Assembly (NCBI GenBank): GCA_001179505.1
Contig: CDMY01000332.1
Span: 1-64,000, forward strand
Direction of reading: 5' to 3'
Source of the DNA: Vitrella brassicaformis CCMP3155
Taxonomy: Eukaryota; Protista; Chromerida
DNA: 64,000 nt
Shown: piece after piece, positions 14,842 through 40,616 of the stretch
Layout: each line of letters starts with the position of its first letter
Numbering within the stretch: the stretch's first letter is position 1
Made by a program: the position numbers and the translations under genes
Notes under the pieces: model-generated
Databases searched by the model: none
Told to the model about the DNA's origin: nothing
What the model saw: only the letters and a program-made list of their open reading frames with translations

Positions 14842-15737
14842 TCATGTTTGCTTGGGGAAATTGCCCGCATTGGCCTGGATGATGCCGACAATCACGCCAA
14901 ACAAACCTGCACACAAAACACATTAAACACACGAGACAGACAGCCACGTTGGCGCCTGTTGGTTGGCTACAATGACTTCATTGTCTGTCTGCAGGCAGGC
15001 CGGCTGACCGAGTGCGCTCCCAAAGATTTCGACAATGAGCATCTTGACGAACAGCGTGGGGTTCTGCGCGTCGCCAAGAGCACACCCACTGCCGCTCACA
15101 CCCACTGCTATCCTGCACACGCACACACACACATACACACCCCAATCGGACCATTCAGCCGTCTGCCTGCCCACCCATCCTCCCATCCACCCACTGCCCA
15201 CCCACCCGCACGAAAGGTTCGATCCGCCGACAGTGATGCCGACCCAAAAGAGGCAGTATCCCGCAGCGATGGCCTCCGGCGGGTATATGCCAGGTGCGGA
15301 TTCCGAGAGCCCTTGCATCTTGTTGACCATGATGATGGCAATGATCACCCCATAGATGGCCACGGCCTCGCAAAAGATGACGCTAATGAGGTTCTTGGAC
15401 CGGATGCGGGGCGCCTTGATGGACGCACCCACCAGAGACGAACCCGTCAGAAATATGCCCCTGACATGACAGTGCAGTCAGTCAAGCAAGACACACACCA
15501 GACAGACAGACAGACAGACAGGGGAGCAGTGAGAATGTGTGTGCAGACGGGCAGTGTGCCACTATGTATGCGTCTGTGCGGTGGGTGCGTGTGTGGCTAC
15601 CACCCACCGCACCGCACATACCATGCAGCTCCGAGGACCGAGAGGCCGAGGGAGAGGGCGATGCCGATTGCCGCCCACGAGTAGGGGTTGATGTGGTAGA
15701 AGACCTCGCCCCACGAGTGAAACGCCTGCGCTGACAT
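14842..15737 (-). CDS. VMA16: V-type H+-ATPase proteolipid subunit c'' (Vma16/ATP6V0B); exons 15737-15622, 15460-15196, 15112-15009, 14906-14842
   Basis: [59 protein letters not shown] ... [31 protein letters not shown], joined in frame. Confidence 0.97.
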
Positions 15738-15976: not shown

Positions 15977-18577
15977 ATGGTCATTCTGACTTGGAAATGG
16001 AGGAGGAAGGCCACATGCGCAATGTGCCTCGTGGGATGGCTCTGTCGCCTGCTGACGACGCCCATCTCGGCGCATGGGCGTGCATCTTCGCCTCTGGGCT
16101 TCGTCGCAACGACAGGCGGCCGGCCGACCAGGTGGCCGAGGCGGGAGCAGATGAGGAAGCTGATCTACAGGCGGAGATCTGCCGCTGCCATGACCACAGA
16201 CCGGCCCAGAAGACAAGCACATCAGGTGAGAAAGATGGGACAGACAGACAGACGCGTGTACATCACATCCATACCAAAAGGCTTTCACTGTGTCTGTCTG
16301 TTTGTCTGTGTGTTGTCTGTTCTTCTGTGTGTGTGCTGTGGCTGGACAGTCCCCACCGGTGGTCGACAAGAGCAACCGTCGAGCGATGCTCGAAGCGCTG
16401 ATGTCATCCTCTCTGGCCGTCACGGCAGCACTCATGGCCATGCAGCCCACAGCCGCATCAGCGGCATCAGCACAGGCCTCGGGCGAGCTCCTCACCTCTT
16501 CCTCATCGAACAGCGACAAGGATGTGTGTGTATCGTCGGCCGAGTCTGCCTGCCCCTTCATCTGTGAGCAACCACACACGCATCAGACCAGGCAGGCATG
16601 AGCATTCTCCTTGCGAGTGACACATCGCTCTTTCTCTTCTTCTCCATGATTGTGCAGCTATGGAGGAGCTGAATGAGATCAGTCGGCTGGCCGCTGCGGA
16701 GGTGCGGCGTGCGCCGAAGGGCATCGAGGCCGTCGAGCAGCCGCTCCCTGAGTTCTTCCCCGAGCTGACGAGTGAGGGCATGACCTGGCGCAAGGTCTTC
16801 GACTCGGTCAAGGGGGCCGACGTGCTCTACGTGGCCTCCGACACCTACTCTCCCTCCTTCGTCACATACATGGCGCGGTTCCTCCTAAACTACGATGACA
16901 CGTGTGCTGCCTGGTGGCGGCAGCAGCGGCTCACCACACAGGCCGTGGCGGACCCCTCTGAGCGGACCAGGATTCTGCTCAAGAGTTTTGGGGAGTTCTC
17001 GTCGTCTGTCGAGTATGGCTTGCGGCGTTACCGGGGCCAGGCGGGTGTCAACAACCTGCTCAACGTCATGATCCGGCGGTACGGTAACCGGCAGATCCCC
17101 GAGTCGCGACGGCAGCTGGCCCTCCTCTTCTCCCTACTCAGCCAGTACCAGCCCATCAACGCTATCACGGTCAGTCAGCGAGGGAGGCTCTCATGCATCC
17201 ATCGTGCGTCTGGTGTCTTGTTCATCATGCGTGCGTGACTGCAGGTGCTGTCCCGTGCCCTCCCGACCCGTCCAACGTTCGCCTTCTCGCCCTCCCCCGC
17301 GGGCATCCCCTCGCCGGTTTTTGCCAGCATGAAGGAGGAGGAGGGCTTCTTCCTCTCAGACCCAGTCGCGCTGCTCCCCGGAGGCGTCAACCCCATCTTC
17401 GACCTCGAGCTGCAGCGGTATCGTGTGAGCGGCCTGCTGGCCGACCCCAAGATGCTCCTCAGCTACCAGCTGCGCCGTGACGGCTCCGTCAACCTGGACC
17501 AGCCTGTCCTGACGCTGTTTGGGCCGCGGGGGCCCTTCCCCGTGACTCGCGAGAAGCCGCTTGACTGGTCGACCTACGCACTGTTCGCCACTGCTGGTGC
17601 GTTTGCGTGTTCGGCGACGCACGCAGCCGTGATCCCCCTGGATGTGGTCAAGACGAAGCGGCAGACCGACCCGGAACGATTTGACTCTATGGGTCTGATG
17701 CAGGGCGCCATCACCCTGGGGAAAGAGGAGGGCTGGCGCATGCTGCTGCAGGGGGCCCAGGCCACCATCCTGGGCTACCTCTGGTACGGCATCACGGTGT
17801 ACCCTGGCTATGAGTTCTTCAAGCGGCTGTTCGCTTCGCTGGCCGGCCCTGCGGGTGCCATCGAGTTCCGAGTGCCGCTGGTGCTGATGGCCGGTGCGGT
17901 GGCGACGGTCTTCGCTGCTGTGGGCGTCTGTCCGTGTGAGGCGGTGCGCATCCGGATGGTGGCTGACCCCAATTACGCCTCGGGGTTCCTCCCCGCCGTC
18001 CAGCGGCTGACCCGAGAGGACGGCCTGTTGAAGCTCTATGACGGCTTCTGGCCGCTGCTCATCCGGCAGGTGGTCTTTGGCATGATGAAGTTCTTTGTGT
18101 TCGACTCGTTTGCTGAGTTCCTCTTCGATGTGTTTCCGGCATTGGACGACACCACGGCCATGAGCCTGTCTGTGTCGGCCTTCTCGGGGCTGGTGGCCGG
18201 GGTGGCCAGCTCGATTGTGTCGCAGCCGGCCGACACGATTTTGTCGCGCATCAACCAGAGAGGCGGGAGGGAGAGCGCCTTTGAGGTGGTGAGGGACATT
18301 TTTGACAAGTGGGGGCCGCAGGGCTTCTTCTTTGGCCTCGGCAGCCGCTGCGTGTGGGCGGGGTCCATCATCGCCGGACAGTTCTTCCTCTATGACGTCC
18401 TCAAGGCTTCCTTTGGCGTCAGGAATGAAGACCTCATGCTGTCAGTGAGAGACACACTCACACACACACACGCACACGCAGTATCTCGTTCTCGCGTCTG
18501 CTCCTGTGTGTTGTGATTGATGTGTTGTGTTATGTGATGTCAGGTTCATGGATGTGCTGTCGGGGCTGCCGCAGTGA
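15977..18577 (+). CDS. Mitochondrial-carrier-family (phosphate carrier-like) protein with long N-terminal extension and probable plastid targeting; exons 15977-16225, 16350-16563, 16658-17169, 17245-18440, 18544-18577
   Basis: Three PX[DE]XX[KR]X[KR]-type signatures (PLDVVKTKRQ, PCEAVRIRMV, PADTILSRIN). PiC-like RQVVFGMMKF and GLGSR...GQFFLYD. The N-terminus has a hydrophobic signal, a GFV motif and an R/T/A-rich transit-like region. The start codon is inferred. Confidence 0.88.
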
Positions 18578-19335
18578 GTGAGAGGTCTGTACACACATGG
18601 CGTGGCGGCCACCGAGTGAATGCAATGCAGTGCGTGCTGTGGAGTGAGTGAATGAATGACGTACAGATTGTGGTGTGGTAGTGGGGTGGGTCCCGGGGGG
18701 GAAAGGGGGTGGTGGGGTGCAGCTGGTCGGATCATGAGTGAATGAATGAGGCTGAGTTGGTCATGTGTGAGTTTGTTGACGATGAACGGCTGCACGGGTG
18801 TGCATTCACTCATTGTGTTGTGTTTGGGGGGTGGGGTGGGGTGGCGTGGGATGGAGGGGGAGTGTCTGGCAACGATGTGCGCCGGACGGACAGACAGACA
18901 GACAGAGAGGCATAGAAATGAATAATGACAGCGATTGATGAGGGCATCCACGCACTCTGGTCCATACAGCACCAATCATGCGTACAGCCAACACACACAA
19001 CACATGCATCACTGTATCTGTCAGAGCAGACAGGCAGGCGGGCAATCTGATGGAATGAATGTGTCTGAGGCAGGCAGCACACGACAAGGGTGGCATATTA
19101 CACCACATCCTTGCAGACGGGCACATCCATGCAGGCGGGCACGGCAGTCAGGAGGGCAGTAAGGGGACATCAGGGAAGAGATGGGATCGATACATCCGCG
19201 TGTAAAAACGAAAAGACTTCTCCGTCTGTGGTCTTAGACCACCCCCCCCAGAGCATGATACACACCACCACGACAGACACCAAGCCAAACGAGCAGCAGG
19301 CAAACAAACAAGACAGACACACGATCGCGGTGGAT
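18500..19335. repeat. Direct duplication copy 1 (carrier last intron end + last exon + downstream ~800 bp)
   Basis: Aligns by eye with 27720-28612, e.g. tcaggttcatggatgtgctgtcggggctgccgcagtga and gcaggcagcacacgacaagggtggcatattacaccacatcc... are shared. Confidence 0.92.
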
Positions 19336-19813
19336 GAGAGCAGACATCCTGCTCCCAGACTCCTCCACCCATATGGCCCATACGGAGGGCAAACCGTTAA
19401 TGCTCTACCTGGTGGAAAACCGCTCTCTCTGTACGCTTCGAAGCCTATCCGATGCCAGTCGTATACGTAGTCACTATGCGCATGAGATCAGTGTCTATCT
19501 CTCCTCTGTATGTATGTATGCATGTGGTGAGCATGAATGGTGTAATGACGGGGTTGGCTGACGGGTGAGTCGTCCATTACATAATAGACCGCTCTGGTTC
19601 GTCTGTATGTCCGCTGCACACGTATGTGCACACCACCACACACACACACACACCACACGCACACAGACGTCCCGGCCGATCGTCATGTGCAATGTCTAGC
19701 CCAGGGTGCTTATCGATAGATATGCAGGCATGGCTATGTAGAAGCTAGATAGACAGGTGTATAAATGGACGATGGAAGGACACCATTTCAATAATCGTCA
19801 CGTGTCTAATTAG

Positions 19814-20952
19814 TCAGTCGTTTCTCGCCAGACGGGCCATGTACTCTTGAAGCTCATCAAACAGACGTGGCTCACTGCCATCAGTCCGCCCATTGCTCTC
19901 ATATCGGTCAATCAGGACGGCAGTGGCCAGTGCCTTCATGTCTCGAACGTCTCTTGTCAGCTCGGCCAACTCCTGCCTCATCTCACTTATCGCTGCCTGC
20001 ACGTCAGCTGCCTGGCTCTCCTGCGCCTCTATCCTCTCCGCCACGTGTTGGGTGGCGTGTATGGTCTTGTACAGCACGGTGGGCAGGTTGACGTACAGCG
20101 CCTTGTTGTCGTGGCCGCGGTCAACGCTGCTCTCGAACACCGCCTCAGGCCAAACACTTCTCACTTCCTCCGCCAGGACGCCTGACAGACAGGCAGATAG
20201 GCCCACTAAGCTCTCTTTGCTCATCAGGCGATAGGCGTCACTGACCAAATTGCCGCTGTCCTGCGTAAGGGATGCGTCTTCCCCTGTGCGTCTCATCCTG
20301 CGTTCTTCCGTCGTCGTTTTTCCATTGGAAGCTGTAGAAGTCAATCTTCTTGATGGCTTCCATCGCTGCCATTCCCCCCTGGGCAGTCTCCTTGCTGACG
20401 CGTGTCTTGTACCTGCCGTCGCTCAGCGCGCCATAGAACTGGCTGAAGAGGCCTCCAGCGTATATCTCGTACAGAGGAAAGTCAGTACCACACCCCAACA
20501 TGCCTGCAGACACACGGACACACACAACCAGCCATGTGTACTCCGTGTGCACTTTATTTGGTGATGCAGGCGCCCTCACCGTATCCCTGCAGGAGCGCAT
20601 TGTCAGCTTGCAGGTCGGCAGCCCCAAGAGATGGGTCGTCCCCTGAAGCCTCAGGCAGCACACGCACGCAATGAGCACACATACATCAAGCACGGGGAAT
20701 CGTTCGCCTACCGCACTGGAAGGTGGCGTATTGCCGCAGTGCGGCTCCTGTGCTGTTGTTGACGGCGGGCGCGCCGATGAGACCCTCCTTCGTGGGTGGC
20801 ACGTTGCCACCAGTGGGCTTCGAGAGCTCATCGATCTTCTCGCTTGGGGGTGGGAAAGGGAAAAGCTGTGGTGGGTTCGCCGCTGCTCGACGAGCCCAGC
20901 AACTTGATGCGACGAGGACGAAAAGTTGACACAGCTGCGAAGCTGCGAGCAT
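19814..20952 (-). CDS. Secreted protein with Peptidase S74 / intramolecular chaperone auto-cleavage domain and C-terminal coiled coil; exons 20952-20712, 20642-20580, 20503-20246, 20181-19814 (309 aa)
   Basis: Signal peptide MLAASQLCQLFVLVASSCWARRAAA. GMLGCGTDFPLYEIYAGG resembles tail-fibre G.VGIGT..P repeats. AL-SDGRYK..(MEAIKKIDFYSFQWK)..RQFGVLAEEVRSVWPEAV..LYVNLPTVLYKTIHATQHVAERIEAQE matches the SDxRxK...GxIAQEV..V.PEAV...coiled-coil pattern. Exon lengths sum to 930 nt with consistent phases. Confidence 0.82.
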
Positions 20953-20984
20953 CGTAGCGTACAGCCGTTCATTGTACACGTGTG

Positions 20985-21395
20985 GTCTTAGACCACCCCC
21001 CCCAGAGCATGATACACACCACCACGACAGACACCAAGCCAAACGAGCAGCAGGCAAACAAACAAGACAGACACACGATCGCGGTGGATGTTCACAGACC
21101 CTCAGTGATCTCACGCGCCATCCACCCCATCAGCAGCAGCGGTTTCAGGGAGCATCCTAGGTGGCCTGACGGCCAAGTCCCCTGTCGGTCTGTCCAACAT
21201 GAAACAGGCACCCTAACATGCAACCCGGACACGAAACACGCAGCACGCAGAGGGCAGATGCAGCAGACAGGAGGATATGCAATGCATAGGGCAGACCGTT
21301 AGCGGTTAGGTAAAACCGTTTTCTTCCCTCTTTTCTCCTGCCTGTCGTCTACGTAATCACTGTGCGCATGAGATCAGTGTCTATCTCTCCTCCGT
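20985..21395. repeat. Third, interrupted copy of the 19229-19505 segment, lying in the divergent promoter of the cassette
   Basis: gtggtcttagaccaccccccccagagcatg...cacgatcgcggtggatg is identical to 19229-19338. tcactgtgcgcatgagatcagtgtctatctctcctc matches ~19470-19505. Confidence 0.88.
21136..21154 (+). promoter_or_regulatory. Candidate telo-box-like promoter motif (GCAGCGGTTTCAGGGAGCA)
   Basis: Perfect 19-nt match to 28771-28789 (minus strand) and a 13-nt core match at 2648-2660. All three lie just upstream of start codons. Confidence 0.4.
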
Positions 21396-21396
21396 G

Positions 21397-24300
21397 ATGC
21401 CGAGTCGATTTAGATTGACTCTCGTGAGCACGTGCCTCTTCGCATTTCTACGCGCATGGCTTCTTGAACTTCGCGTGGCCGTCGACGCACAGTTCACAGC
21501 CGCCTGCGTATTTGGCAACAATCGCAAAGCAGAGGGAGCCACGAGAACAGCTTCAGCGGGACTGCCTTCCCGGTGGGTTAGTGAAGCACCGACATAAAAC
21601 GGGACATGCGTGTGTGTCGTTGTATGCGTGTGTGTGTGTGTGTGTCATTACAGAGGTGCCGCCGGCTGGCCTGAAGCTGTCGACGTGTTCCCCACACCCC
21701 CTGCTGTACTTCAGAGATGACGAAGGCGAAGAGAGGGCTTTGGGGCAGTGCGTGGCTGGTAAGTGAAGTCACGAACCGCTTCATTCACATCCCTATGTCT
21801 TCCCTTTGCAGAGGATGACCTGAAGAGACGACTGCGAACAGCACAGAAGAACGCCCTCGGTGTTCCTGTGAGCGCTACTGGGGAGGGCATTCTCTGCGGT
21901 GCTGTGGATGGCAACGGCGGCACGGCTGCTCTTTCTGTCTGCCCGCCGGACCGACCAATCTGTGCACGCTCCAGCGACCAGCGCTTCTGCTTCTGCCTTG
22001 CTGATGAAACAGGCGCGAAGAGCCACAATGCCACATCCAATCCCAACAATTGCATGTGCATTTGCTAATGGTGAGCTGAGTCGTCAGCCCGAAGGCACTC
22101 CATCGCTGGTCAGAGGCGTTCTTCAAGGCCAGCCATCCTCTCTCTGTTTCCCGCCTTCCCTCGACCCCTGCATCAACCCAGTCAATCCCTTCGCGCCCAA
22201 CCTCGACTGCTACGATGCTCTCGAGGTCGTGGAGATTGCCGACACGAGCGGCGTCGACCCTGCATCGCTCGCAATGGGCGACCACAACAAGAACCCAAGA
22301 GCGTTTTCGCAACTCGTGCCTGGGACTTATCTGATGGAAGACGTCAAGTCGGATGCTTGGGCGGATGCGATTGAGAATGTGGGCGACACGGACAGCTGCC
22401 TGCGCATCCAGGGAAGAATGGAGGACTCCGACGAGGACTTCTCCATCGATCTGTCATGCAACACGACTGAGGGTGTGTCTGCCATCCTCCCTTTCGACTG
22501 TCCTGACGTGGGCCTCTGCTCGGTGCGAGATGGCAACGTATTCAAACCTGCACTCGTAAGTGGGAGACATGATGGAGAGAAGAGATGGGTCGGCACCATC
22601 TTCATGCGCCTGATGCGCGTGCGTCGATTGCCTGATGTGTGTGCGTCGATCAGCTTGTGATTCAGGGCGTGTTGAAGGTGGTCAACGCCAGTGAGGCCGA
22701 CTGCGTCGGCCTTGAGGCGCAGATCGAGCTGACAGCGTGAATGCAAAGACAGCCTGAGGCATTCATAGGGCTCACTGCATGTTTCTTGCCTGTGTCTCTG
22801 TTTGTGTGCAGCACCGGATTGGTCGATGAAGCGATCTCTGGTCGAGCTCGCTCCGCCAACTACACAGCCGAGCAGCGAATCACGATCTTTGCTGAAGGAG
22901 AAGAGACAGAGCTCATTACCACACGTGGCATTGCTCTGGTCAGTCCAGCCGCCAACTCTGACTTGGGGCTGCTCACGTTTCCCAGCACGGTGCCCGCCGG
23001 CTGCCCTTCCCTGCTCAAGCAGCGCATCTTCACGATCACATCGGGCGACGTGGCGGCAGGCGGGGTGATCGCGGCCACTGCATCCGGATACAGTTACGAT
23101 CAGAACGACACTGTAGTCTCAAAGGTAAACACGTAGAAGCGAGGGACAGCACCTGCATTGCGATCCCCTTTCTGGTTTTGTCTGCTGCATGCAGAAAGTG
23201 TTTGAGGTCGAGATAGGCTCTGGCAAGTCTGCCGATTTCAACGAGGTCTGCCGCGAGGCGGCTGAAGAGGATCGCATTTCCGCAGAGCAGGAGCGGCTGG
23301 TGACTGAGCAAGCGGCGATAGGTGTGGACCCTTCTCGTGCATTGGTCGGCATCGAGGCACCCTCTCTGTGGTTCCCGCTTTTCAAGACAGGCCCAAGCCC
23401 GTTCTTCCCCCTGTTCAATGCGCGAAGGGTGGCACGCTATTCGGTGACCAGGGAATTTAACCCCGATGAGATTGCGGACGAGTTCGGCGTTACTGACCGA
23501 GACCGAGAGCAGTCGAAGATCTTCTTGTGGAGAAGAGTGTTTGATTTCATATCTGTTCAAGCCGACATCAGTCGGCCTATAAGCTATGTCCAGATCTTAT
23601 GTGCCGAGAACGTGACGGTTCTACCGGTGACATTCAAGCTGGAGAATCTGGAGACGGGCAGCTCTCTCGATCTCATCCTCAAGGCACAACTGGGCTCCTT
23701 ACTCGACCAGGATGCAGGCGGTGAGACAGAGAAAACACCCTTCTGGAGCCATCCGTTTGCAATCGTTTTTTTTGTTTGTTCATGCTCAGTTTATGTTGAG
23801 TGCCGACGCCGTGTGCTGCAGACTCTCCCAGTTGGCTTCGCCGACACATATCAAATCCCTGGCGGCCTCACAGCAGGCTCGATCGCTGCTGTTGGAGTCG
23901 ATCCTAAGGTGTGGGCGCTCGGAGACAACGTGTTCGTGGACGTGCTGATCAAAGACGGAGAAGGTGGATCCACCACGACGTCACTGAGAGATGAGGGGAT
24001 TGTTGCTAATCTCCAACAGCACAACTGCATCGGTGTGACAGAGACCAAGCAGAGAGAAATCAGCGCGACGGTGTTGGTGTACGAGAGACAAGAGGAGGGC
24101 AATCGGGCCAGCGAGGAGGTCATCTTGGACACGACCTGCGAGATCGGCTTCGAATGCTTTGCAGCGTGTCCCGAGCCCAGGTTGCCGGTCTCCAGCCCCG
24201 CGGCAGTGCAGAATAGGACGTATCAGCTTCTCGATGCACCCTTCAGAACTGCAACGTCAGAGTGGACTATTACATCTGGCACAATGGAACCAGCTCGTTA

Positions 24301-27300
24301 TTCTTCTGGACCTCTTCCTCTGTTCGATTCTCGTTACGATACGAGAGGATGTACTGACAATCGCTTTACTGATTCAAGCTGCACGAGGACCGTCGATGAG
24401 AAGATCTATAGCTGCGCGCCCGACCAAGGGACGGGCATCGGCGTGCAAGTGAAGGTCGAGTACGATTCAGCAGCACTCGATAGCAGAATCACCCATGGCT
24501 TCTTTGAGCCCTTGGCGTTGGCGAATGTCTTCATCAAAGGGGCGGTCTGGCAAGTCTATCCCCCTGAATGCGCAGGTACTTAAGCCGTACGATGATTCAA
24601 ATATATGTGGATCAGCTTATCCTCTGTTTTCTTCTGGTAGAACAGGCAGCATTGTCTTTGTCGAAGGTAGCGGATAGCGTGGGTGACGGCAGGAAACCGT
24701 CTCTGCTGTGCCGTGATTTGATGCAGGCGATCTTCTTGTTGGAGTGGGCTTTCAAAACAACTTCATACAGCCACAAGAAGGCCGGGGTTACTTTGGAGAT
24801 GAGGTCAACACTCAGCTCGATGATTTGATATTTGCACGGGGGCAAGAGGGGCAAGAGGGGCTTCATTTCGGCATTCCAGAGGCGCTGCTGACTTCAAGCG
24901 TGCGGCTGATGAAGGTGGAATACACTCTACTGAGTCTTGCTGAAGAAGCGACGATTGAAGCATGCTTCAACGCAAACAAGTCCAGAAAGGTCTCAACGAA
25001 GGATCTTGTCTTTCATCCGGACGGCCAAACAAAAACAAAGATCTCATACTTTGATGTGTCTCGATTTAACGGTGATCTCCAGGTAGGCCGTGTATGTGTG
25101 TGCACTGATTGCAGGGACTTTTTTTGTTACTCTTGCATATGCGTATTTTGCAGGAGATCCAGTCCGAGTCTTTTGGTGCTCCACTGCTGAACGATGATGA
25201 GCTTGGGCTTAAGTCTTTCTTGCACATTGACTCGAATATCGAAGGCGACATATTTAGCCTGAGTTCGTCTGTATTACTCGGCAACCTTACCAACTTCTGC
25301 GACGAGACCAACAAGAGTGAGCAGGCCACACGAGCATGCAAGCGATCGTGTTTCTCTGCCACTGTATTTGCCTGCGTGAATGTGTACGCTCCAGTTTTGA
25401 TTCAGTGCCAACCTGCGAAGCGGCTGCAGCTCGTGGCAGACCATGGATCGAGGGCTGCTGATGATGAACTTGTCAACTCCATCGCAACTGTGGTGTCATC
25501 AGGCGCTGGCTTTGACTACATTGCCAATCTCACCGCCCCTCCGGGCTTTGATTTGTCGTGCAACATCAGCGAAGCATCGGAGATTTTTCGGCTGACAATG
25601 TCGAACAGAGAGGGTGGACACCTCGTGTACGCCGACACGGCGTACATCGACCATGACATTCAGAATTATCTGATTCGTACTGTGCCGTTGAGTGTTGGCT
25701 TTAGAAGAGCGAATGGGGAGACGGGAAAGGTAGACGCCCTCTGTCCTGTGGCAATCGACTGCTGTAAGGAAACATAGGGAAACATCGGCTAAGAACACCA
25801 CTTATTTCTTGTGTGTCCGTGAATGTGTATCAGTGCTGCCGGAGAGGGCACCACGGCCTGTTTTCGACCCAAGTCCTGACAACACGTCCATTGCGAGACC
25901 CCCCCGGCCTCCGGCTTCTACACCGCTGCCCGGGAGAGATGATTTCTGTCCAGGTAGCTTCAAGGAAGCAGACAGGGCCTTGTAGCAAGGGACGGTTACC
26001 TTTTCCTCTTCCCTTTTTAGAGCCGCTGCTCTTCGAAGCAGCGGGCAATCTCTCAACACTGCAGGACCTGCGGCTCCCCACCGGTCTACATCCCCACGTC
26101 ATATGGAATGCTCGATCTATCAGTCCCTTCATTGTTGTGGCGCTAGACGCCGGAGAGGATGGGGTTGCCACCCTATCAGTTGTGGATCTCTTAATATTCG
26201 GCAATCGTGTCATTGGGGAGTAATCCGTGACCTGCTAAAAAAGAAAGAGGCTTCCTGTGTCATGATTAATACACATGTGCTGCAGGGAAAGAGTGACTGT
26301 CGAAGCCGTATCTGATTTTACATCTGGTACCTTCGAGTTGGTCGTCGTAGTGCTGACACGAAACATCAATGGAGCTGCTGACGGCATCGGCATACAGGTA
26401 TATGACGATAGAAGCAAAAGAGTCACACGAAACTGGCTGGCTTCTTCGTGCCCTGCCTGTCCTCCAGGCCTTGTGTGTCAATGGCCCATGCAATGCCAAG
26501 TTGGTTGTATTTGAGCACACTGGCGATTGCATTCCAAGAGCAGTCGATGGGAAGGTGTTCGGTGTGAGTGAGACTATCGACTTAGAGGCTCTCCCGCTTC
26601 TCCCTTCTCCTCCGGCGCCTCCAGGAGGTCGTCTGCCGAGACCGTGCCCAGGCAAGCGCAGGAAATACACTACTGCACACATGCCTGCTTGGAATACGTG
26701 CAGGTTCCCTTTTGGGCCCAATCAACGGCTCGCTGGAAGCGGGGAACCCGACGAGCATTGATAGTATATCTGGTCCTTTTCCTGCTTGCTTCGTCATCGT
26801 GGCTTTGGATTCACTCACTATGGGTGATAGTGACTTATTCGTATACAACCCGTCCACAGGGTAAGGAAAGGTAGCAGTTGGTGTGCAATAGACTGAATGA
26901 TGCATCCGTACAGGGACGGCGTCATTAGCGATAAAAAAAGTGATGGTATAATAGATAGTTACGAGGATGTGGTGGTGGTTGATGTCTGTGCTTTTGGAGG
27001 GAGTTTTTCCTTTGGTGTGAGCGATCGCTTCAATGCCACTCTAAGGCGGAAAAGAATGCTATGCGTGCTCTTCTTTCAGGTGTCATGTTACTCCGGGCCT
27101 TGTGAATGGGTGCGCATTGAATGCGTAGCAAAGAGAATACCTTTGTTGCTATATTTCCTCTCCTTTGTTTCTTGCAGGAACTTATTCCTTTCGATCATGA
27201 CGGCAATTGCATGCCCTCGCTGCCTTACGGGGTGAAAGTGATTGGGATCGATACCAAAATCGATCCGACACTTCCTGTTTTCCCAGGACGCTGACAGCTA

Positions 27301-27426
27301 CACGCTGAGTCTTCTGCTGTCAAGAGAGTCTTTTACAAGTAGTGAGTTTGCGTGCGTGCATGTGATTTTTCCCTATTTAAGAATCTGCACCTCAACACAG
27401 ACATCGAGATGGAATTCCCTCTTTGA
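21397..27426 (+). CDS. Very large (roughly 1400-1500 aa) secreted Cys-containing, beta-rich protein of unknown family; about 20 exons, some boundaries uncertain
   Basis: Signal-like MPSRFRLTLVSTCLFAFLRAWLLELRVAVDA. Long ORFs (21899-22660, 22741-23136, 23189-24583, 24744-25190, 25109-25777, 26369-26761) are each bounded by splice sites and can be chained in phase to a TGA at 27424-27426. Many N-x-S/T sequons. Confidence 0.72.
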
Positions 27427-27719
27427 GTGGGCGACACACGCACATGCAATTATACATGTATGTGAGGAGAGCTGTGGGCTATGGACTGTGGTGCTGTATG
27501 CGCGTAGTGGCGCCACCTGCGTCAGTCAATGCACCTGTTCTCAGACACAATAGATCTATGCTCAGACCTCCCCCTGTCGTCCACCCAACCAAATGTCGTT
27601 CACATACATGGATTGACGAAGGTATGGAGTCCATCAAGCCATACAGTGACAACCATACCTTACCGAGAACCACTCTCGCCTCTCTCTTTCTCTCTCTCTC
27701 TCTGTCTGTGTGTGTGTGT

Positions 27720-28612
27720 TGTGATTGATGTGTTGTGCTGTGTGGTGTCAGGTTCATGGATGTGCTGTCGGGGCTGCCGCAGTGATGGAATGGCACACAC
27801 ATGACGGACGGCCACCGAGTGAATGCGATGCATGCCGTTCCGTTCCGTGCCGTGCTGTGCTGTGGAGTGAGTGAATGACGTACTCATAAGTACAACCAAT
27901 ACATCATTAAATGTGGTGTGGTAGTGGAAGGGGAGGGGGTGGGCTGGTGGGTGTGCAGCTTGTCGGCTCGTGAGTGAATCAATCGATAAGCCTGAGTCCC
28001 GTGCGTGTGTGGGTGGGTGAATGCAATGCAATGCAATGTGTGAGTTTGTTGAGGATGGACGTGCAAGATGGCTGGATGGCTGCGAGGCTACACCACCTGG
28101 GTGTGCATTCAGTCTTGGTGTTTGGGGAGTGTCTGGCAAGGATGGACGCCGGACAAAAGACAGACAGACAGATAGACAGACAGAGACAGAGACAGAGGCA
28201 TTGACAGGGATGATTGATGAAGGCATCCACGCAGTTCTGGTCCGTCCGTACAGCGCCAACCATGCGCACAGCCAGCCAACACACACAACACATGCATCAC
28301 TGTATCAGTCAGAGCAGACAGGCAGCCGGGCAATCTGATGGAATGAATGTGTCTGAGGCAGGCAGCACACGACAAGGGTGGCATATTACACCACATCCTT
28401 GCAGACGGGCACATCCATGCAGGCGGGCACGGCAGTCAGGAGGGCAGTAAGGGGACATCAGGGAAGATATGGGATCGATGCATCCGCGTGTAAAAACGAA
28501 AAGACTTCTCCGTCTGTGGTCTTAGACCACCCCCCCAGAGCATGATACACACCACCACGACAGACACCAAGCCAAACGAGCTGCAGGCAAACAAACAAGA
28601 CAGACACACGAT
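27720..28612. repeat. Direct duplication copy 2, including an orphan copy of the carrier terminal exon (FMDVLSGLPQ*)
   Basis: Matches 18500-19335 with substitutions and microsatellite length changes. No upstream carrier exons precede it. Confidence 0.92.
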
Positions 28613-28799: not shown

Positions 28800-29951
28800 A
28801 TGGCCACAAGCAGCACCGCTGAGAGGACACATCAAAGATGGCTTTTATCGTTCCTTTCGGCGGCGCTCTCAGCGTCAACGTGGTGGCAGTGCACAGCGCT
28901 TCATGGGAGGTTGGTACATCCTTCAACGACGGCAGCAAGATCAACTCCGCATCCTCCCGCATTCAGCATGACACCGCTGCCGCACTTACCGTTCATCGCT
29001 CCGTCTGGTCCAACGAAGCGACGACATTCTGGCCCTTCCCGTGTGCATGCCCACGCTGGTGATTCGGAGAAAAGGCGGGCACGGCTTCTTCGTCGGCTGC
29101 CGTTCGCGCCCGCCTCCGATGCGTCTGACTCATCGCTGAAGGGCATGGCCACCACAGCGACCGAAGAGGAGGTGGTCGCTGCAGCTCCACCTGCTGCCTC
29201 TTCATTAGTGCCTACGACAGAAGGCACGCGGCTGACACTGTATGCCGAGAGGAAAGGGAGCCTTGCATTCGAGGAGAACGAGGGGGAGAGGAGTCTTCGG
29301 GGTGAGGGACGAAGGAAGGCACACTGACTGTCTGCCTCATGTACTGCCATTCGTGTGTGTGTGTGTGTGCCTGCCTGCTCAGAGTACCTTTCTCTACCTG
29401 CCGAGGAATACTCTGTCCTCGACCCTCAAGCAATCACCCGTATCAACGCGACGGCTTTCATCTACACGATGCAGCCCTTGACCTTCCTCTCCCTCAAGGT
29501 GGCGCCAGAGATGCTTGCAATCGTCGATGTGGATGCCTCCGTCCCCTCATCCCTAATCCGAGTGGTGGATGGGCGCATCGGCATGAAGGGCAGTGAGGCA
29601 TTGAGTGCCGGGATGCTGTCGTCTGCACAGAGGGCTCTCAACAGCGTTACCATACGCTCCTCCAACCTGTCCACCATCTCGGCCGACCGGGTGAAGTGCA
29701 AGCGGACAGGCAAGGAGAACCCTATTGTTAACTGCGAAACACGGCTGGAGGTCTCGTTCACCATCAGCAACTCGAGCCTCGTCCCGCCCGAAGTGGTGCT
29801 GCGAGCAGGCACCTGGTGTCTGCAGAAGACACTCAATCGGCTGGTCCCTGCATTCCTCGGCCGGCTACGTGCTGACTACAGGCTATGGGCTGTGGGCGAT
29901 GATAGCCGCACGCCGCCGGCCGTCTCGGGAGGCATGGGGGGGATGGAGTGA
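28800..29951 (+). CDS. DUF1997-family protein, probably plastid targeted; exons 28800-29301, 29383-29951
   Basis: SLREYLSLPAEEYSVLDPQAITRI..F and GTWCLQKTLNRLVPAFLGRLRADYRLWAVG resemble DUF1997 ends as recalled. The N-terminus has a hydrophobic signal followed by a P/S/R-rich transit-like segment. Confidence 0.8.
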
Positions 29952-35041: not shown

Positions 35042-36330
35042 TTAGTAGCCCATGTTGTGTCGCACGTCCCGCGCCGTGTCTGTGATGCGCAGCCGCCCCA
35101 GTATGCACCGCAGCTCGTGCAACACCGCTGTTTCGATGCCATGCTCGAGCGGGTTGTCATCGGGCGGTGGCGGCAGGGGGTGGGCGGCCAGGAGGGGGGC
35201 AATGATGTGGTTGAGCTCCTTGTTGGTCAGGTCATACTGCTGTGGCACCTGCCCCCCGTTGGCCTGGCTCACGCGGAGCCCGAAGAGGGCACAGCGGTTC
35301 GTGTAGAGGTAGTGGCGCTCGGCAACCTCTGCAGTGTTCTGGCACTGACACGCACACACACACAGTGAGACACACAATTGTGTCATTCAAGTGTCATTGT
35401 CCCTGCTCATTGCCCGTGGTCTGTGTGTGTGTGTGTGTGTGTCTGACGGATGGCGATGATTTGCTGGAATAGCAGCTGCTTGAAGTTGTTGTCCATCCGA
35501 CGCGCCCTATTGACCAGCCTGGTGGTCTCTGCCCGTCTCTGCTGGGCCGTCATGCCACTGTCGTAGAGGTGACGATTCACCCCCCTCATCGCCGACGATT
35601 CACCCCCCTCATCGCCGCCCGTTGCGCATTGTTGAGCCCAAACACCTGCCGGAAGAAGAACCTCCTCGGCACCTGGGTGTCTGGGCCCTGCGCCATCCTA
35701 ATGAAGAGCACCCCGCCAAGGTAACGCCACATGATCTTGCGCGTCCCCTGGGCGAGCTGTGGCTGGCGGGGCAGGGCAGCGATGATGAGGCGGGCGATGG
35801 GCACACCGACGCAGCAGAACCACACGTATAAACGAGAGCGCAGCTCTGATAGACAGTGTTGTGTGTGACGACTGTTGTGTGTCCCATCCATAAGTGGAGA
35901 CCTACCATGGCAGGGTTGCGGCCGCCATACGTGGCATATCGCGTTGATAAATATCCGCTCATAACTGACCAAGCAACAAAAGCCATGCGCAAAATGTGTC
36001 AATCTCTGGGCAATGAGCTTCTTGAGTGCATACTTCCATTGCGCATCTTGTCCGATTGTGTTGCCGTTGGCCTGCAAGTAGTCGACTATGTCCATCACGT
36101 AGTGGGCCAGGATGATGGTAACGTGCTGCATGCAGACCGGCAAAAAGGGAAGAACACACATCAATAAGTCAAGCATGAAAGACATGGCGCATTGGATCAT
36201 CCATCCATCTGATAAGTGACGCTCAATGACCGGGCATCGTGACGCTGTGTGGGCGAGGGCGACAGCTGTTGAGCTCTACGGTATCAGCAAGAGCGACAAA
36301 GGATGGAGAGTAGGTCACCAAGAAGAATGG
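35042..36330 (-). pseudogene. Disrupted gene: in-frame TAG in the first exon plus a 23-bp frameshifting tandem duplication
   Basis: Frame HPLSLLLIP*SSTAVALAHTASRCP|HVTIILAHYVMDIVDYLQ... runs to RAAMRGVNRRR*, while the shifted frame resumes MRGVNRHLYDSG. The duplication is at 35571-35616. Confidence 0.6.
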
Positions 36331-36627: not shown

Positions 36628-37460
36628 CTAAGGCGTTGACTGTTTTCTGATGTCACTGACAAGCCTCTCTCCGAGCGCTGACAAAGACGACAGTAAATGA
36701 AGTCTGCATGCTGGAATGAAGAACCTCATACAGGGTGGAACAAATACTGAGCGCTGGATGAGGGATGTGAAGGCCTCATTGTCCTTTCTCGTGGCATAGA
36801 GGCGTTCCACAAGTTGAGGGTCTTCGGCGAGTGCGATAGCAAGCTGGTCGTACTCGCCGTTGCCGTATTCGGAGGTCGATTTTACCACATGAAGCACTGT
36901 CTTGAGCCTGTCGCTTGTCCCGCTCGTGTCGCTTTCGCTCGGCATCATCACCAAGGTGTCATGCCCTCCCCCTTGGCCCGTACTTGGTGCGAGATGAAAT
37001 TGTGCAGCTCCTGGTTCGTCTCCTCGTATCGCTGCATCACCGTCCGGAGGGTGGCGGGGTGCAGGTCCTGTTCCGGATGGCGGGCTAGGCTGGGCGGCAG
37101 TGGTGTCAAGTCTTCCTCCTCTTCTAGTGGGCCAGGATGATGGTGAGTTGCTGCATGAGAGACCGGCACAAAGGCACACACGAGAGACTGCCTGAATAAG
37201 TGGATAAGTGACGCTCGATGACTGACCTCATTGGTGTGGTGGTGCCTAGCACTGAAGTCTATCAGATGCCCATAAATCTCCCTATGATCAGGAAACAGCA
37301 GCCAGCGACCGCAATCGGCATCGCGCCCTCATGCGTCTTGCATCCGGCAGCGGACCGGCCATATGTGACGCTGTGTGGGCGAGGGCGACAGCTGTTGAGC
37401 TCACGAGTGTCAGCAAGAGCGATAAAGGATGGAATAGGTCACCAGAGGGATGATGCCGAA
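36628..37460 (-). pseudogene. Diverged paralog of the 35-36.3 kb locus sharing only the 5' module; probably decayed
   Basis: 37125-37450 aligns with 36100-36330 (gtgacgctgtgtgggcgagggcgacagctgttgagctc; gtgggccaggatgatggt). It has an ~150-nt insertion and TAG where the paralog has TAC. Confidence 0.45.
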
Positions 37461-37825: not shown

Positions 37826-40474
37826 TCAAGGGTACTCGCGGAACTCGACCGAGTCCGACCGGTAGATGGTGGGCGGCAGCTGCCACGAGTTGCCCGGTTC
37901 CCAGTAGATGTCCAGATGTCTGGCAACAAGCACGGACAGCAACACATCCATCCATCCATCCATTCACTCATTCGTCCATGGAAGTGTGTGTGTCGTCTTA
38001 CGCGTAGATGTCGGGCTTGTATGTCACGTAGGACATGGGCGAGATGCAGTTGAGAGTCTGTGGCGTGGCAGTGGCACCTCCACGTCCCCCCTTCCACAGG
38101 GGCGCGAGCCCCTTGGCGCGCAGGTCGTTGAGCACACGATGGACGTCTTTCTGGTCCGTGAAGTCCCTCGTGTGCACACCGAGCATGTACAGGCGGCGAC
38201 CTCGGTCGTCCTCCTTGGGCTCGACGGTGTGCTTGGCAGCTGGGCCGAGCTTCCCCTCGCTGTGCAAATCGATCGCGCGAGCACAGGCCGTGCGCAGGTT
38301 GTTCTCTCCATCTGGGAGAGGGCAACAACAGAAACGTATCCACATATGTCATCGCATCAGACAGATGCACTTTTCTTGAGGTGCAGCCAGGCCAGCTCGT
38401 CTGTCCGACCAAAATGGAGCATCCATTTGCCGGCCACGCACCCCATCTCGGCCGCCAGCTGGAGGAGCCTCTCCTTGATGACGGTGTTCTTGCCGCCGTG
38501 CGCTTGGTCCGTCAGAATCTGCAGACCCCTCGACTGGATCTTGGCAATGTCATAGTGATTCTCTCCCGTCGGCTCGTTCCACAGATAGTGATACTGAGTG
38601 TCGCGCTTGTGTTTGGCGCCTTGAGATGGCTGGCCAGCGGGCGGGTGCGATGGATGGGGAGGGCAGGATGGAGCGCGCCTCTTCTCGGTCTCTCGAGACA
38701 ACGCTGAGCACAAACCACAAACATCACACAAGACCACACCACACCCATGACACCACATCCATCCATCCACCCACCCGCCGCCCAGGTACCTGAGTGCTTG
38801 ATGCCCGCCTTCTGCTGCTGCTGCTGCTGCTGCTGCTGATGGGTGCGGTCAGCCCCAGCGTTGATCTCCCTCATCAGCTGCATCGCCAGGGCGTGGTCGG
38901 CTTCCTCCTGGCGCTTGCGGCAAAGCTCTTCGTCCGTCATGGAGGCATCCAGGTCCATGGCGGTGGGCTGGGAGGGACCTGCCGGCGCTGCGGCCGCTGC
39001 AGCAGATGCCGATGCGCTCACGCCGGATGAGGTGGCGCCGGCTGTGGTCTTGGCGGCCTTGGCCTGCTTCTCGCCCTCCTCCTTGCGCTTCAGGTACTCC
39101 TCGTCTGTGAAGTCGTTGGAGCTGTACTGCGTCACGGGCGACAGGCGCAGATCCGCCCACGTGCCTGTGTTGCCAGAATACACGTCCAAAATCCTGATCA
39201 ACCAACCAATACACACACATGCGCAGCGCACAGAGAGGGAGGGAGAGCGCACAAAGCACAGCACAGCACAGCACAGCACGTGAGTGAGTCGGTATATGCG
39301 GTGCATGGGTTCCTGCTGGCTGCCGTACGTACGTCAGCAGATCGAGCTTGTAGCGGACTCGTTTGTTGCCCCTGAACTCCTCACCACCACCGCCGCCGCC
39401 CTGCTGCTGCTGCTGCTGCTGGTGGTCATCTCCAGGCGTCCCGTCGGCCACCACACCGATCTTGCGGAGGCCGTTGAGGACGCGCTTGACCTCCTGCCGG
39501 TCGCGGAAGTCGGGACTGTACACACAGATGACGTACATGGGGCCGCTGGGCCTCAGGGCGCACTTGGAGCAGTTGCCCAGCTGCCCCTGGCTGGTCGCCA
39601 ACGCCACACGACGCCACGCCTCATCTATCATGTCATCACCTGCAGTGCAATGCATGCATGCATCAGCATCACACGGACGCACGGACGGACGGACGGACGG
39701 ACGGACGGACGGCAACACCACAAGACACAGTAAGTAACGTCCATCAATGCATTGCAAAGAGGCCTTCCTTCCTTGCTTCCTTCCTTGCCTCCTTGCTTCT
39801 GTCTTTCCTTCTCACCCACCGAAGTAGAGGAGCCACTTGCCGGTGACGCACTTGGTGTCGATGGCCAACTGCGTCAGTCGCTCCAGGGTCTCCTTGCGAA
39901 TCACCCCCCTCTTGGCCCCGGGCTGCTTGAGCTTCTCGCGACAATCGAGCAGAATGGCCTCGCCTCTGGCCTCGATGGCCTTGACCTCCTGCTCCGAGAA
40001 CTCAGGCTCAGGCTGGCCGCCGTCATGCCGCACCAACCGCCACCTGCCACGCAGCGTCTCGTGCACCTGATGGCTGGCGCGTGTGCTGCTGGGGTTGGCC
40101 AAGGGCAGATGCGATGAATGGTTGCCCCTGGTCGGGGGGGGTCGGGCCTGCTGCTGCTGCTGCTGATGGGTGCGGTCAGCCCCAGCGTTGATCTCGCCCG
40201 ACAGCTGCATCGCCAGGGCGTGGTCGGCTTCCTCCTGGCGCTTGCGGCAACGCTCCTCGTCCGTCATGGAGGCATCCAGGTCCCTGGCGGCGGGCTGGGA
40301 GGGACCTGCCGGCGCTGCGGCCGCTGCAGCAGATGCCGATGCGCTCACGCCGGATGAGGTGGCGCCGGCTGTGGTCTTGGCGGCCTTGGCCTGCTTCTCG
40401 CCCTCCTCCTTGCGCTTCAGGTACTCCTCCTTTCTGCGCTTGCGGATCTCAGCCAGCTGAGATTCTGAATCCAT
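37826..40474 (-). CDS. Protein with two DUF1917/UPF0696 (C11orf68-like, eIF4E-like fold) domains; exons 40474-39820, 39639-39333, 39193-38790, 38703-38371, 38311-38002, 37919-37826
   Basis: Domain 1: CVTGKWLLYFG..EAWRRVA..GQLG..KC..YVICVYSPDFRDRQEVKRVL..RYKLDLLTILDVYSGN. Domain 2: CVAGKWMLHF..GKLG..LGVHTRDFTDQKDVHRVL..TYKPDIYAHLDIY..NSWQLPPTIY. All exons join in frame. Confidence 0.85.
38822..40429. repeat. Near-identical ~280-bp internal repeat (38822-39102 and 40148-40429)
   Basis: Both copies encode EEYLKRKEEGEKQAKAAKTTAGATSSGVSASASAAAAAAPAGPSQP...EEADHALAMQL..EINAGADRTHQQQQQ with only a handful of substitutions. Confidence 0.95.
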
Positions 40475-40616
40475 CAGACGAGGCTTCCAATGCACATTCG
40501 CCCGTTCATTCCCCTTTTCGGGAAAGCTCGCAAAACCCTGCACCCTTTCCGAAACCCTGCGAGTTGCGCAGCGGATCAATCCGTTTTGGCGGCTTTCCTG
40601 CTGCGGGAGTCAGAGG

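What the first reader, a model, noticed from the sequence alone, without database searches (positions are those of the whole stretch)
18500..28612. ~8.4 kb two-gene cassette inserted between ~0.85 kb direct duplications
The end of the carrier gene plus ~800 bp downstream appears at 18500-19335 and again at 27720-28612, where the terminal exon is orphaned. Collapsing the copies restores a simple carrier-to-DUF1997 order. The insert has shorter, mostly microsatellite-free introns and, by eye, more A/T-ending codons than its neighbours, and no transposase. This looks like a foreign or translocated module integrated by recombination or via a circular intermediate. The copies have diverged, which argues against an assembly artefact.
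Basis: partly seen in the sequence, partly recalled or inferred. Interest (0 to 1): 0.78.

Follow-up and report, generated by a model that had tools for sequence, protein, structure and literature searches.

The report
Nested flank duplications around two Vitrella genes
In this stretch of the alga Vitrella brassicaformis, an 0.84-kb piece holding the end of a carrier gene really is repeated on both sides of an 8.4-kb block, but the two genes in that block are home-grown Vitrella family members rather than foreign DNA, so this is an ordinary, if tidy, local rearrangement.

Summary
The repeat is real: 18497-19332 recurs at 27704-28609, including a letter-perfect orphan copy of the carrier's 10-codon last exon. 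The window is Vitrella brassicaformis CCMP3155 (carrier = CEM02648.1).

19227-19512 recurs at 20981-21399, so a 110-bp piece (T) exists three times and the Peptidase_S74 gene has its own direct repeats.

The 8.4-kb block holds two spliced, head-to-head genes:
- a secreted Peptidase_S74-domain gene (19814-20952, minus strand), confirmed by a transcript-derived protein;
- a large secreted-protein gene (21397-27294, about 20 short GT-AG introns).

Every detectable relative of the large gene is from Vitrella, with at least six paralogues on other scaffolds. The S74 gene has 64-69% paralogues on another scaffold. I found no transposase, terminal inverted repeats, RNA genes or gaps.

The scarcity of microsatellites is real. 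Low GC3 is a 5'-to-3' gradient in the large gene only, and 56-60 kb shows a similar island.

"Foreign" is rejected. My best reading is two short local templated duplications of flanking DNA, later partly homogenised by gene conversion. Insertion of the genes with target duplication remains a serious rival.

The parts
15977..18577 (+). Mitochondrial-carrier (SLC25A3-like) gene, CEM02648.1. The last intron is 18441-18543 and the terminal exon is 18544-18577 (FMDVLSGLPQ + stop).
   Evidence: Pfam PF00153 E 3.6e-43. P0002 and P0122 are 100% identical and were mapped by tblastn.
18497..19332 (+). Duplication 1, copy A: the last 47 nt of the carrier's final intron, the terminal exon, the presumed 3' UTR (UTR bounds not mapped here) and downstream DNA.
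18993..19332 (+). High-identity core of duplication 1. It is 98.5% identical to 28281-28609, while the surrounding duplicated DNA is 47-88% identical. Inferred to be a gene-conversion tract.
19227..19512 (+). Duplication 2, copy 1. Element T (19227-19336) starts with the palindrome GTGGTCT-T-AGACCAC followed by C8. An 11-nt block, a diverged spacer and a 60-nt block (19453-19512) follow.
19814..20952 (-). Secreted Peptidase_S74 (intramolecular chaperone) domain gene with 4 exons and 3 introns. The signal-peptide-like N-terminus (judged by eye) starts at the ATG at 20952.
   Evidence: PF13884 scores 41.7 bits against a cutoff of 22 on the transcript-derived P0127. Sequence read.
20981..21399 (+). 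Duplication 2, copy 2. It fills nearly all of the 444-bp head-to-head region between the S74 ATG (20952) and the large gene's ATG (21397). T' at 20981-21090 is 100% identical to T, and the 60-nt block at 21339-21399 is 90% identical.
21397..27294 (+). Large secreted-protein gene with no Pfam domain, a member of a Vitrella-only family. Homology to paralogues supports it up to 25763. The 3' extension (exons 25834-25953, 26021-26219, 26286-26397, 26468-26563, 26625-26860, 26914-27016, 27080-27124 and 27178-27294) is inferred from a stop-free chain with eight GT-AG introns of 53-70 nt.
27704..28609 (+). Duplication 1, copy B. It starts in a (CT)n/(TG)n tract and ends 190 bp upstream of the DUF1997 ATG. 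It contains T'' (28515-28612, 98% identical to T).
27752..27785 (+). Orphan copy of the carrier's terminal exon. A 40-nt perfect match runs from the splice acceptor to the stop codon and ends exactly at the stop.
28800..29951 (+). DUF1997 gene (5' part). Its ATG at 28800 lies 187 bp after T''.
   Evidence: PF09366 E 5.1e-16. Sequence read.

Best explanation
The S74 gene and the large gene are resident Vitrella genes forming a normal head-to-head pair that shares a 444-bp promoter region. Short pieces of flanking DNA were copied around them, not the genes themselves. In one event a copy of the pair's promoter region (T-p-q-r, about 0.3-0.4 kb) was placed beyond the 3' end of the S74 gene, next to the carrier's downstream DNA. 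In another event the 0.84-kb carrier 3' end, including T, was copied into the gap between the large gene's 3' end and DUF1997.

Both events are DNA-level, same-orientation copies over less than 10 kb. Their breakpoints lie in a microsatellite and at a hairpin followed by C8. That is what replication template switching or break repair by templated synthesis (MMBIR/FoSTeS/SDSA-type) produces. Gene conversion among the nearby copies later kept T and a 340-bp core almost identical while the rest drifted to 70-88%.

Shown: the repeats, their limits, the gene content, and the native family membership. Inferred: the direction (flank copied rather than genes inserted), the repair mechanism, and the gene conversion.
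For: - Two overlapping direct duplications, with T in three copies.
- Duplication 1 starts mid-intron, so it was made at the DNA level, not from RNA.
- Copy 2 of duplication 2 is essentially the whole S74/large-gene intergenic region and ends at the large gene's ATG. Head-to-head pairs are over-represented in Vitrella, and the genome is compact with few transposable elements (PMC4501334).
- Both genes have introns. The S74 gene matches a spliced transcript-derived protein at 100%. Their only relatives are Vitrella paralogues at 41-83% (large gene) and 64-69% (S74). These are much less alike than the flank repeats (85-100%), so no donor of matching age is seen.
- No transposase, terminal inverted repeats, tRNA or Rfam hits.
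- Bimodal identity supports conversion. T plus 11 nt is 117/117 identical beside blocks at 90% and roughly 70%, and the 340-bp core is 98.5% beside 47-88%.
- The left limit of duplication 2 sits at a perfect 7+7 palindrome that occurs in the window only in the three T copies.
Against: - The same layout follows from insertion of the genes with duplication of the target. Collapsing the copies gives a plausible 0.95-kb carrier-to-DUF1997 spacer.
- The block differs from its neighbours: microsatellite coverage is 0.29% against 5.5%, introns are 53-95 nt, and GC3 falls to about 0.5.
- T and T' (100%) are closer than T and T'' (98%). That fits 'duplication 2 is younger' slightly better, although conversion blurs this.
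- A closer paralogue of the large gene could be hidden inside a 50% cluster or outside the length window of the word search.
- No outgroup or second assembly was available.
Confidence: 0.45

Rival explanations
1. The genes were inserted. The original order was carrier, then the 0.84-kb segment, then DUF1997. First the large gene, then the S74 gene, arrived from elsewhere in the Vitrella genome. Each arrival came with a tandem duplication of the target (0.84 kb, then 0.3-0.4 kb), with the new gene at the duplication junction. The mechanism would be template switching to a distant locus and back, capture of a DNA fragment at a staggered break, or re-integration of a circular DNA.
For: - The nested A-X-A pattern, with exactly one gene per event.
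- Collapsing the repeats restores a simple two-gene order.
- The block is poor in microsatellites and has lower GC3 than its neighbours.
- Both genes belong to dispersed multigene families, so copies do move around this genome.
- T and T' are identical, which suits a younger second event.
Against: - No donor of matching age was found. The best paralogues are 41-83% and 64-69% identical at the protein level.
- The S74 gene would have landed with only 28 bp upstream of its ATG and would have had to borrow a promoter.
- A similar low-GC, microsatellite-free island at 56-60 kb has no flanking repeats, so that composition does not mark insertions.
- A single-crossover integration of a circle would need the circle to carry the 0.84-kb carrier 3' end already.
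Confidence: 0.3
2. The layout is an assembly artefact. It would be a wrong join in a short-read assembly at the thrice-repeated 110-bp T element, or two haplotypes or paralogous loci stitched in series, so the local order shown is not the true one.
For: - T is 98-100% identical in three places and could mislead a short-read assembler.
- The assembly is a shotgun draft of 1,064 scaffolds made from reads that were about 80% bacterial (PMC4501334).
Against: - The two 0.84-kb copies differ by 12-50% over most of their length, with many indels, so both must exist in the genome.
- There are no N gaps.
- 110 bp should be short enough for read pairs to span (the library details were not checked).
- Transcript-derived proteins P0002 and P0127 match the genes on either side of copy A.
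Confidence: 0.1
3. The block is foreign DNA or a mobile element: horizontally transferred, viral, or a cargo-carrying transposon that integrated here.
For: - Peptidase_S74 is best known from phage tailspikes.
- Lower GC and GC3 in part of the block.
- Direct repeats at both ends.
Against: - About 20 GT-AG introns, and a spliced transcript-derived protein for the S74 gene.
- Only Vitrella relatives for the large gene among 1.84 billion representatives.
- S74 paralogues sit elsewhere in Vitrella.
- No transposase, integrase or reverse transcriptase, and no terminal inverted repeats.
- The 'terminal repeats' contain a host intron fragment and a host exon.
Confidence: 0.03

Closest known systems
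Short templated or interspersed duplications, and tandem duplications with junctional insertions, attributed to replication template switching (FoSTeS/MMBIR) or break repair
   Same: Same-orientation copies of 0.3-0.8 kb placed within 10 kb. Breakpoints lie in a microsatellite and at a hairpin-forming palindrome. Two events overlap at one site. No recombinase gene is present.
   Different: The events are old (12-30% divergence outside the converted tracts), so junction microhomology can no longer be read. No donor or empty site was available. The mechanism is inferred from the layout only.
Campbell-type (single-crossover) integration of a circular DNA
   Different: It needs a circle that already carries the carrier's 3' end. 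It does not explain the second, overlapping duplication. No circle, att-like site or recombinase was seen.
LTR retrotransposons and other transposons with target-site duplications
   Same: Direct repeats flank an internal segment.
   Different: The repeats hold a host intron fragment, a coding exon and the DNA after its stop codon. There is no gag/pol, transposase or terminal inverted repeat. At 0.3-0.84 kb the repeats are far longer than known target-site duplications.
Concerted evolution by gene conversion between nearby repeats
   Same: Sharply bounded tracts (117 nt at 100%, 340 nt at 98.5%) lie inside older, diverged duplicates within 9 kb of each other.
   Different: Conversion is inferred from the identity profile alone. 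Selective constraint on T (it lies in two promoter regions) is not excluded.
Peptidase_S74 intramolecular chaperone domain proteins (phage endosialidase tailspikes; eukaryotic MYRF)
   Same: The minus-strand gene has the domain above Pfam's threshold, starting at an SDGRYK motif and followed by a coiled-coil-like tail.
   Different: It is a short (about 290 aa) secreted protein with introns in an alga. It has no tailspike or DNA-binding part and no match in PDB sequences.

Membership tests
Horizontally acquired / foreign DNA island | Closest relatives lie outside the host lineage | tested here: not met
   Large gene: 7 hits in 1.84e9 representatives. Five are NCBI/UniProt Vitrella proteins, one clusters at 90% with one, and one (P0001) is an unnamed JGI sequence. 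S74: the nearest hits are Vitrella CEM11937.1 and CEM11939.1.
Horizontally acquired / foreign DNA island | Gene structure unlike the host (no or odd introns) | tested here: not met
   Three introns in S74, confirmed by the 100% spliced transcript-derived protein P0127. About 20 GT-AG introns in the large gene.
Horizontally acquired / foreign DNA island | Composition deviates from the host as a block | tested here: inconclusive
   GC3 forms a gradient from 0.68 to about 0.5 inside one gene. S74 is normal at 0.66-0.71. A similar island exists at 56-60 kb.
Horizontally acquired / foreign DNA island | Absent from the same site in sister taxa or strains | not testable with these tools
Two metagenome scans found nothing.
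DNA transposon / cargo-carrying mobile element | Transposase, integrase or recombinase gene | tested here: not met
   Pfam on the main ORFs (70 aa or longer) of both strands in 19.3-27.7 kb found none.
DNA transposon / cargo-carrying mobile element | Terminal inverted repeats and a short target-site duplication | tested here: not met
   Only (CA)n/(TG)n complementarity was found. The flanking repeats are 0.3-0.84 kb.
LTR retrotransposon | Two LTRs flanking gag/pol | tested here: not met
   The repeats contain the carrier's intron end and terminal exon. No reverse transcriptase or integrase.
Simple tandem duplication | The whole unit is repeated head to tail | tested here: not met
   Only the 0.84-kb and 0.3-kb flanks recur. 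The genes between occur once in the window.
Template-switch / repair-mediated duplication (with or without junctional insertion) | Same-orientation copies at short range, made at the DNA level | tested here: met
   Direct repeats 1.75 and 9.2 kb apart. Duplication 1 begins mid-intron.
Template-switch / repair-mediated duplication (with or without junctional insertion) | Microhomology or templated bases at the junctions | tested here: inconclusive
   The right junction lies in CT/TG low-complexity DNA and the duplication 2 limit lies at a palindrome. Divergence hides the original junctions.
Peptidase_S74 domain proteins | PF13884 match above the gathering score | tested here: met
   41.7 bits against a cutoff of 22 on P0127. 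26.3 bits on the genomic ORF.
Peptidase_S74 domain proteins | Ser-Lys catalytic dyad and self-cleavage | not tested
   An SDGRYK motif sits at the domain start. Its role as the dyad is recalled from the phage K1F enzyme and was not tested here.
Mitochondrial carrier family (left neighbour) | Three Mito_carr repeats | tested here: met
   PF00153, 3 stretches, E 3.6e-43.

The most novel reading that the evidence does not exclude
Vitrella may have a recurrent way of dropping single, promoter-less genes into intergenic DNA while duplicating 0.3-0.85 kb of the target. The hotspot would be the T element (palindrome plus C8). Two such events would be nested here, and other repeat-X-repeat layouts occur in the same window (36.2/37.4 kb and 38.8/40.1 kb). 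That would be a gene-capture process with target duplications far longer than any known transposase makes, and a route by which lineage-specific secreted-protein families spread through the genome.
Probability: 0.1. Interest if true: 0.6.

Novelty: new member of a known kind. Interest (0 to 1): 0.25.

Why it matters
The finding documents a clean, nested example of local duplication in a compact protist genome. It leaves behind an orphan coding exon and a spare copy of a bidirectional promoter region, both raw material for new gene ends.

It also improves the local annotation. The large gene probably runs 1.5 kb further than homology to its paralogues shows, and it belongs to a family seen only in Vitrella.

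It does not point to gene transfer or to a new mobile element. Its wider value depends on whether the repeat-gene-repeat pattern proves common across the genome.

Tried and rejected
This ruled out synteny with Chromera, donor loci, and UTR evidence on which exon copy is used.
- Two metagenome scans, with the window exon and with P0001, found no relative.
- Rfam and tRNA scans of the whole window: nothing.
- Folding T and the 340-bp core as RNA gave z-scores from -1.2 to +0.4, so there is no sign of a structured RNA.
- Terminal inverted repeat search: only microsatellite complementarity.
- Pfam on the large gene, its paralogues and the tail ORFs: no domain.
- PDB sequence search with the S74 protein: none.
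- AlphaFold on the 262-aa exon with 8 paralogues gave pLDDT 40, too poor to use, so no fold search was run.
- Paper supplements hold nothing on S74 or DUF1997.
- The idea that the tail at 25.8-27.7 kb is an empty spacer or a third gene was rejected in favour of a 3' extension of the large gene.
- The idea that the orphan exon is read in frame from the good donor at 27622/27623 was rejected, because a TGA lies two codons before that donor in the required phase.
- The joined spliced model of the large gene was used only inside a script to check phase and stops. It was not searched, folded or handed to any tool. All searches were exon by exon, by reference.
- No contig looked human.


Full report
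**Organism and setting.** The carrier gene's product is 100% identical to a transcript-derived JGI protein (P0002). It clusters with CEM02648.1 / A0A0G4EWL2 of Vitrella brassicaformis CCMP3155, on a 116,552-bp scaffold. According to the genome paper, Vitrella has a compact 72.7-Mb genome with only 1.5 Mb of transposable elements, a median intergenic distance of 92 bp, and an excess of head-to-head gene pairs (PMC4501334).

**The observation.** A self-comparison of the window and a pairwise alignment confirm a direct duplication. Copy A is 18497-19332 and copy B is 27704-28609. The BLAST blocks are 18505-18633 / 27713-27835 (88%, E 4e-37) and 18857-19325 / 28124-28612 (91%, E 0.0). The piece between is 19333-27703, or 8,371 bp. 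The window has no N runs.

The duplication starts 47 nt before the end of the carrier's last intron (GT at 18441, AG at 18543). It contains the terminal exon, 18544-18577, which encodes FMDVLSGLPQ plus the stop. The copy at 27752-27785 is identical. Because intron sequence is included, the copy was made from DNA, not from mRNA.

Identity along the pair is bimodal:
- about 87% at 18497-18640;
- 47-88% with many indels in the G/T-rich middle;
- 98.5% over the last 340 bp (18993-19332).

The last 110 bp of copy A (19227-19336, here called T) occur a third time at 20981-21090 with 100% identity. That identity continues 11 nt beyond the end of duplication 1. After a diverged spacer, a 60-nt block (19453-19512) recurs at 21339-21399 at 90%.

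So there is a second duplication, 19227-19512 / 20981-21399, that overlaps the first, and T is simply their overlap. T begins with a perfect palindrome (GTGGTCT-T-AGACCAC) followed by C8. That palindrome occurs in the window only in the three T copies, against 0.17 matches expected by chance. The left limit of duplication 2 lies exactly at it.

**Gene content of the block.**

*The S74 gene.* On the minus strand, 19814-20952 is a four-exon gene. Its spliced product is matched at 100% by a transcript-derived protein (P0127), which carries a Peptidase_S74 domain (41.7 bits against a cutoff of 22). The first exon, read from the ATG at 20952, starts with a signal-peptide-like stretch. Paralogues CEM11937.1 and CEM11939.1 (64-69% identical) lie together on a 77,888-bp scaffold.

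*The large gene.* On the plus strand a large gene starts at the ATG at 21397, directly after the 60-nt block. It has no Pfam domain. The word search found one unnamed relative (P0001). That protein spans several window exons with the introns removed, which fits the exon structure.

Because this left the protein open, and because the 'foreign' claim rests on who its relatives are, I ran the full HMMER scan. It found seven relatives among 1.84 billion representatives. Five resolve to NCBI or UniProt Vitrella proteins on five other scaffolds. One clusters at 90% with a Vitrella protein, and P0001 is an unnamed JGI sequence. No Chromera or other taxon was hit.

Identity to the closest paralogue, CEL93052.1, falls from 83% in the 5' exons to 41% in the 3' exons.

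*The tail.* Homology to paralogues ends near 25763, at a conserved CP..C motif. From a strong donor there, a chain of eight further exons reaches a TGA at 27292-27294. The chain has matching phases, no in-frame stop, and eight GT-AG introns of 53-70 nt. I therefore read 25.8-27.3 kb as a 3' extension of this gene, not as spacer. This is an inference.

I joined the exons only inside a script, to check phase and stops. I did not search, fold or submit the joined model. All searches were exon by exon, by reference.

*How the two genes sit.* They are head to head with 444 bp between their ATGs, and copy 2 of duplication 2 fills almost all of that space.

**Is the block foreign or mobile?** No.
- Both genes have ordinary spliceosomal introns. 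The S74 gene's spliced product is matched at 100% by a transcript-derived protein.
- Both belong to Vitrella families.
- No transposase, integrase or reverse transcriptase turned up on the main ORFs of either strand.
- There are no terminal inverted repeats beyond microsatellite complementarity, no tRNA, and no Rfam family.
- The 'terminal repeats' contain a host intron fragment and a host exon.

**Composition.** The scarcity of microsatellites is real: 0.29% of 21400-27670 against 5.5% elsewhere. The introns are short.

GC3, however, is not uniformly low. The S74 exons (0.66-0.71) and the large gene's 5' exons (0.68) are close to the typical genes of the window, where GC3 is mostly 0.68-0.82 (0.58 for the first DUF1997 exon). 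GC3 then drifts down to about 0.5 toward the 3' end, in parallel with the falling identity to the paralogue.

A second low-GC, microsatellite-free island at 56-60 kb has no flanking repeats. This composition therefore does not mark insertions.

**How it arose.** The layout is a-T-pqr-[S74]-T'-pqr'-[large gene]-a''-T''-DUF1997. Two histories fit it equally in number of events.

- *History (i): flank copying.* The two genes are a resident head-to-head pair. Their promoter region was once copied to the far side of the S74 gene. Later the carrier's 3' end plus T was copied to the far side of the large gene.
- *History (ii): gene insertion.* Carrier and DUF1997 were once neighbours. The large gene and then the S74 gene were inserted, each with a tandem duplication of the target.

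I favour (i) at about 0.45, against 0.30 for (ii), for three reasons:
- It needs only two short, neutral, local copies, of a size typical for templated repair.
- It leaves a normal Vitrella head-to-head pair intact. Under (ii), the S74 gene would have to land with 28 bp of upstream DNA and borrow a promoter.
- No paralogue is as similar to either gene as the flank repeats are to each other.

Against (i): the block's distinct composition, the tidy carrier-to-DUF1997 order after collapsing, and T = T' being slightly closer than T and T''. A close paralogue of the large gene could also be hidden by 50% clustering or by the length window of the word search.

Either way, the breakpoints (mid-intron microsatellite, palindrome plus C8) and the absence of any recombinase point to replication template switching or break repair, not to a transposon. 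A single-crossover integration of a circle would require the circle to carry the carrier's 3' end already, and it does not explain the second duplication.

**Later history.** T plus 11 nt is 117/117 identical between copies 1 and 2. Next to it lie a block at 90% and a spacer that is only partly alignable (roughly 70% by eye). At 10% or more divergence, 117 unchanged bases have a chance of about 4e-6. The 340-bp core between copies A and B shows the same contrast. Gene conversion between nearby repeats is the simplest cause. Constraint on T, which lies in two promoter regions, is not excluded. T shows no RNA-structure signal.

**The orphan exon.** The perfect match between the two copies runs 40 nt from the splice acceptor to the stop codon and ends exactly there. 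Shuffling the alignment columns gives P about 1.5e-4. That overstates the case. The exon in copy A is under selection, so only changes in copy B count, which by my estimate gives a chance of roughly 0.01-0.07. The flanking DNA is also slippage-prone.

A good donor lies 129 nt upstream (27622/27623), but the frame needed to read FMDVLSGLPQ has a TGA two codons before it. Whether the exon copy is used is open and needs RNA-seq.

**Artefact?** Both 0.84-kb copies must exist, since they differ by 12-50% over most of their length. A wrong join at T cannot be excluded from sequence alone, but 110 bp should be spannable by read pairs. I give this 0.1.

**Limits.** I therefore could not fetch paralogue loci, Chromera synteny or transcript UTRs. 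Both metagenome scans were blank. The structure model of one exon was too poor to use. No sequence looked human.

**Verdict.** This is a real and neatly nested pair of local duplications around two native, lineage-specific genes. The 'foreign module' reading is rejected. The 'inserted module' reading is possible but not favoured. It is of modest interest unless the pattern proves recurrent across the genome.

Noticed in passing
window 56000-60000: A second low-GC (0.50-0.56) island with no perfect microsatellites at all. It holds long minus-strand ORFs (56962-57663, 57848-58687, 58691-59155) without Pfam hits and with GC3 0.56-0.63. It has no flanking direct repeats.
   Followed up: partly
window 38821-39102 and 40148-40429: A 282-bp direct repeat at 97% identity, 1,327 bp apart. 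It is GC-rich and stop-free on the minus strand (ORFs 38852-39811 and 39815-40609). It looks like a duplicated exon or two adjacent paralogous exons. Only the 282 bp recur, not the unit between.
   Followed up: partly
window 36228-36320 and 37353-37444: A 95-bp direct repeat (90%) flanking about 1.0 kb of low-GC DNA (0.51). A shorter motif (GATAAGTGACGCTC.ATGAC) also recurs at about 36211 and 37203. This is the same repeat-X-repeat layout as the main finding, on a smaller scale.
   Followed up: partly
window 21812-22014 versus protein P0129 (CEL93052.1): The annotated N-terminus of the closest paralogue resembles an out-of-frame translation of this exon (window ORF 21872-22657). This suggests that the paralogue's gene model starts in the wrong frame or is 5'-truncated, and that the two loci are very alike at the DNA level here.
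   Followed up: no
window 25763-27294: The large gene appears to carry a C-terminal extension of about 340 aa (eight short exons) that has no counterpart in the annotated paralogues and no Pfam hit. It may be a fused extra module.
   Followed up: partly
window 21397-25763 and paralogues P0129-P0138: This is a family of about 1,000-1,250-aa, Cys-rich, signal-peptide-bearing proteins with no Pfam domain and no detectable relative outside Vitrella, not even in Chromera. Two members, CEM00729.1 and CEM00731.1, lie on one scaffold.
   Followed up: partly
window 14926-15477 (-), 40982-42349 (+), 55487-56437 (-), 60981-63017 (+): Other genes recognised by Pfam: a proteolipid subunit (ATP-synt_C), weak sub-threshold LRR matches, an ABA4-like protein, and a nucleotidyltransferase-domain protein. 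GC3 is 0.68-0.71.
   Followed up: no
protein cluster of P0002: The 90% cluster of the carrier protein also lists four unrelated-looking 55-aa proteins (P0123-P0126). This is probably a clustering quirk of the database.
   Followed up: no
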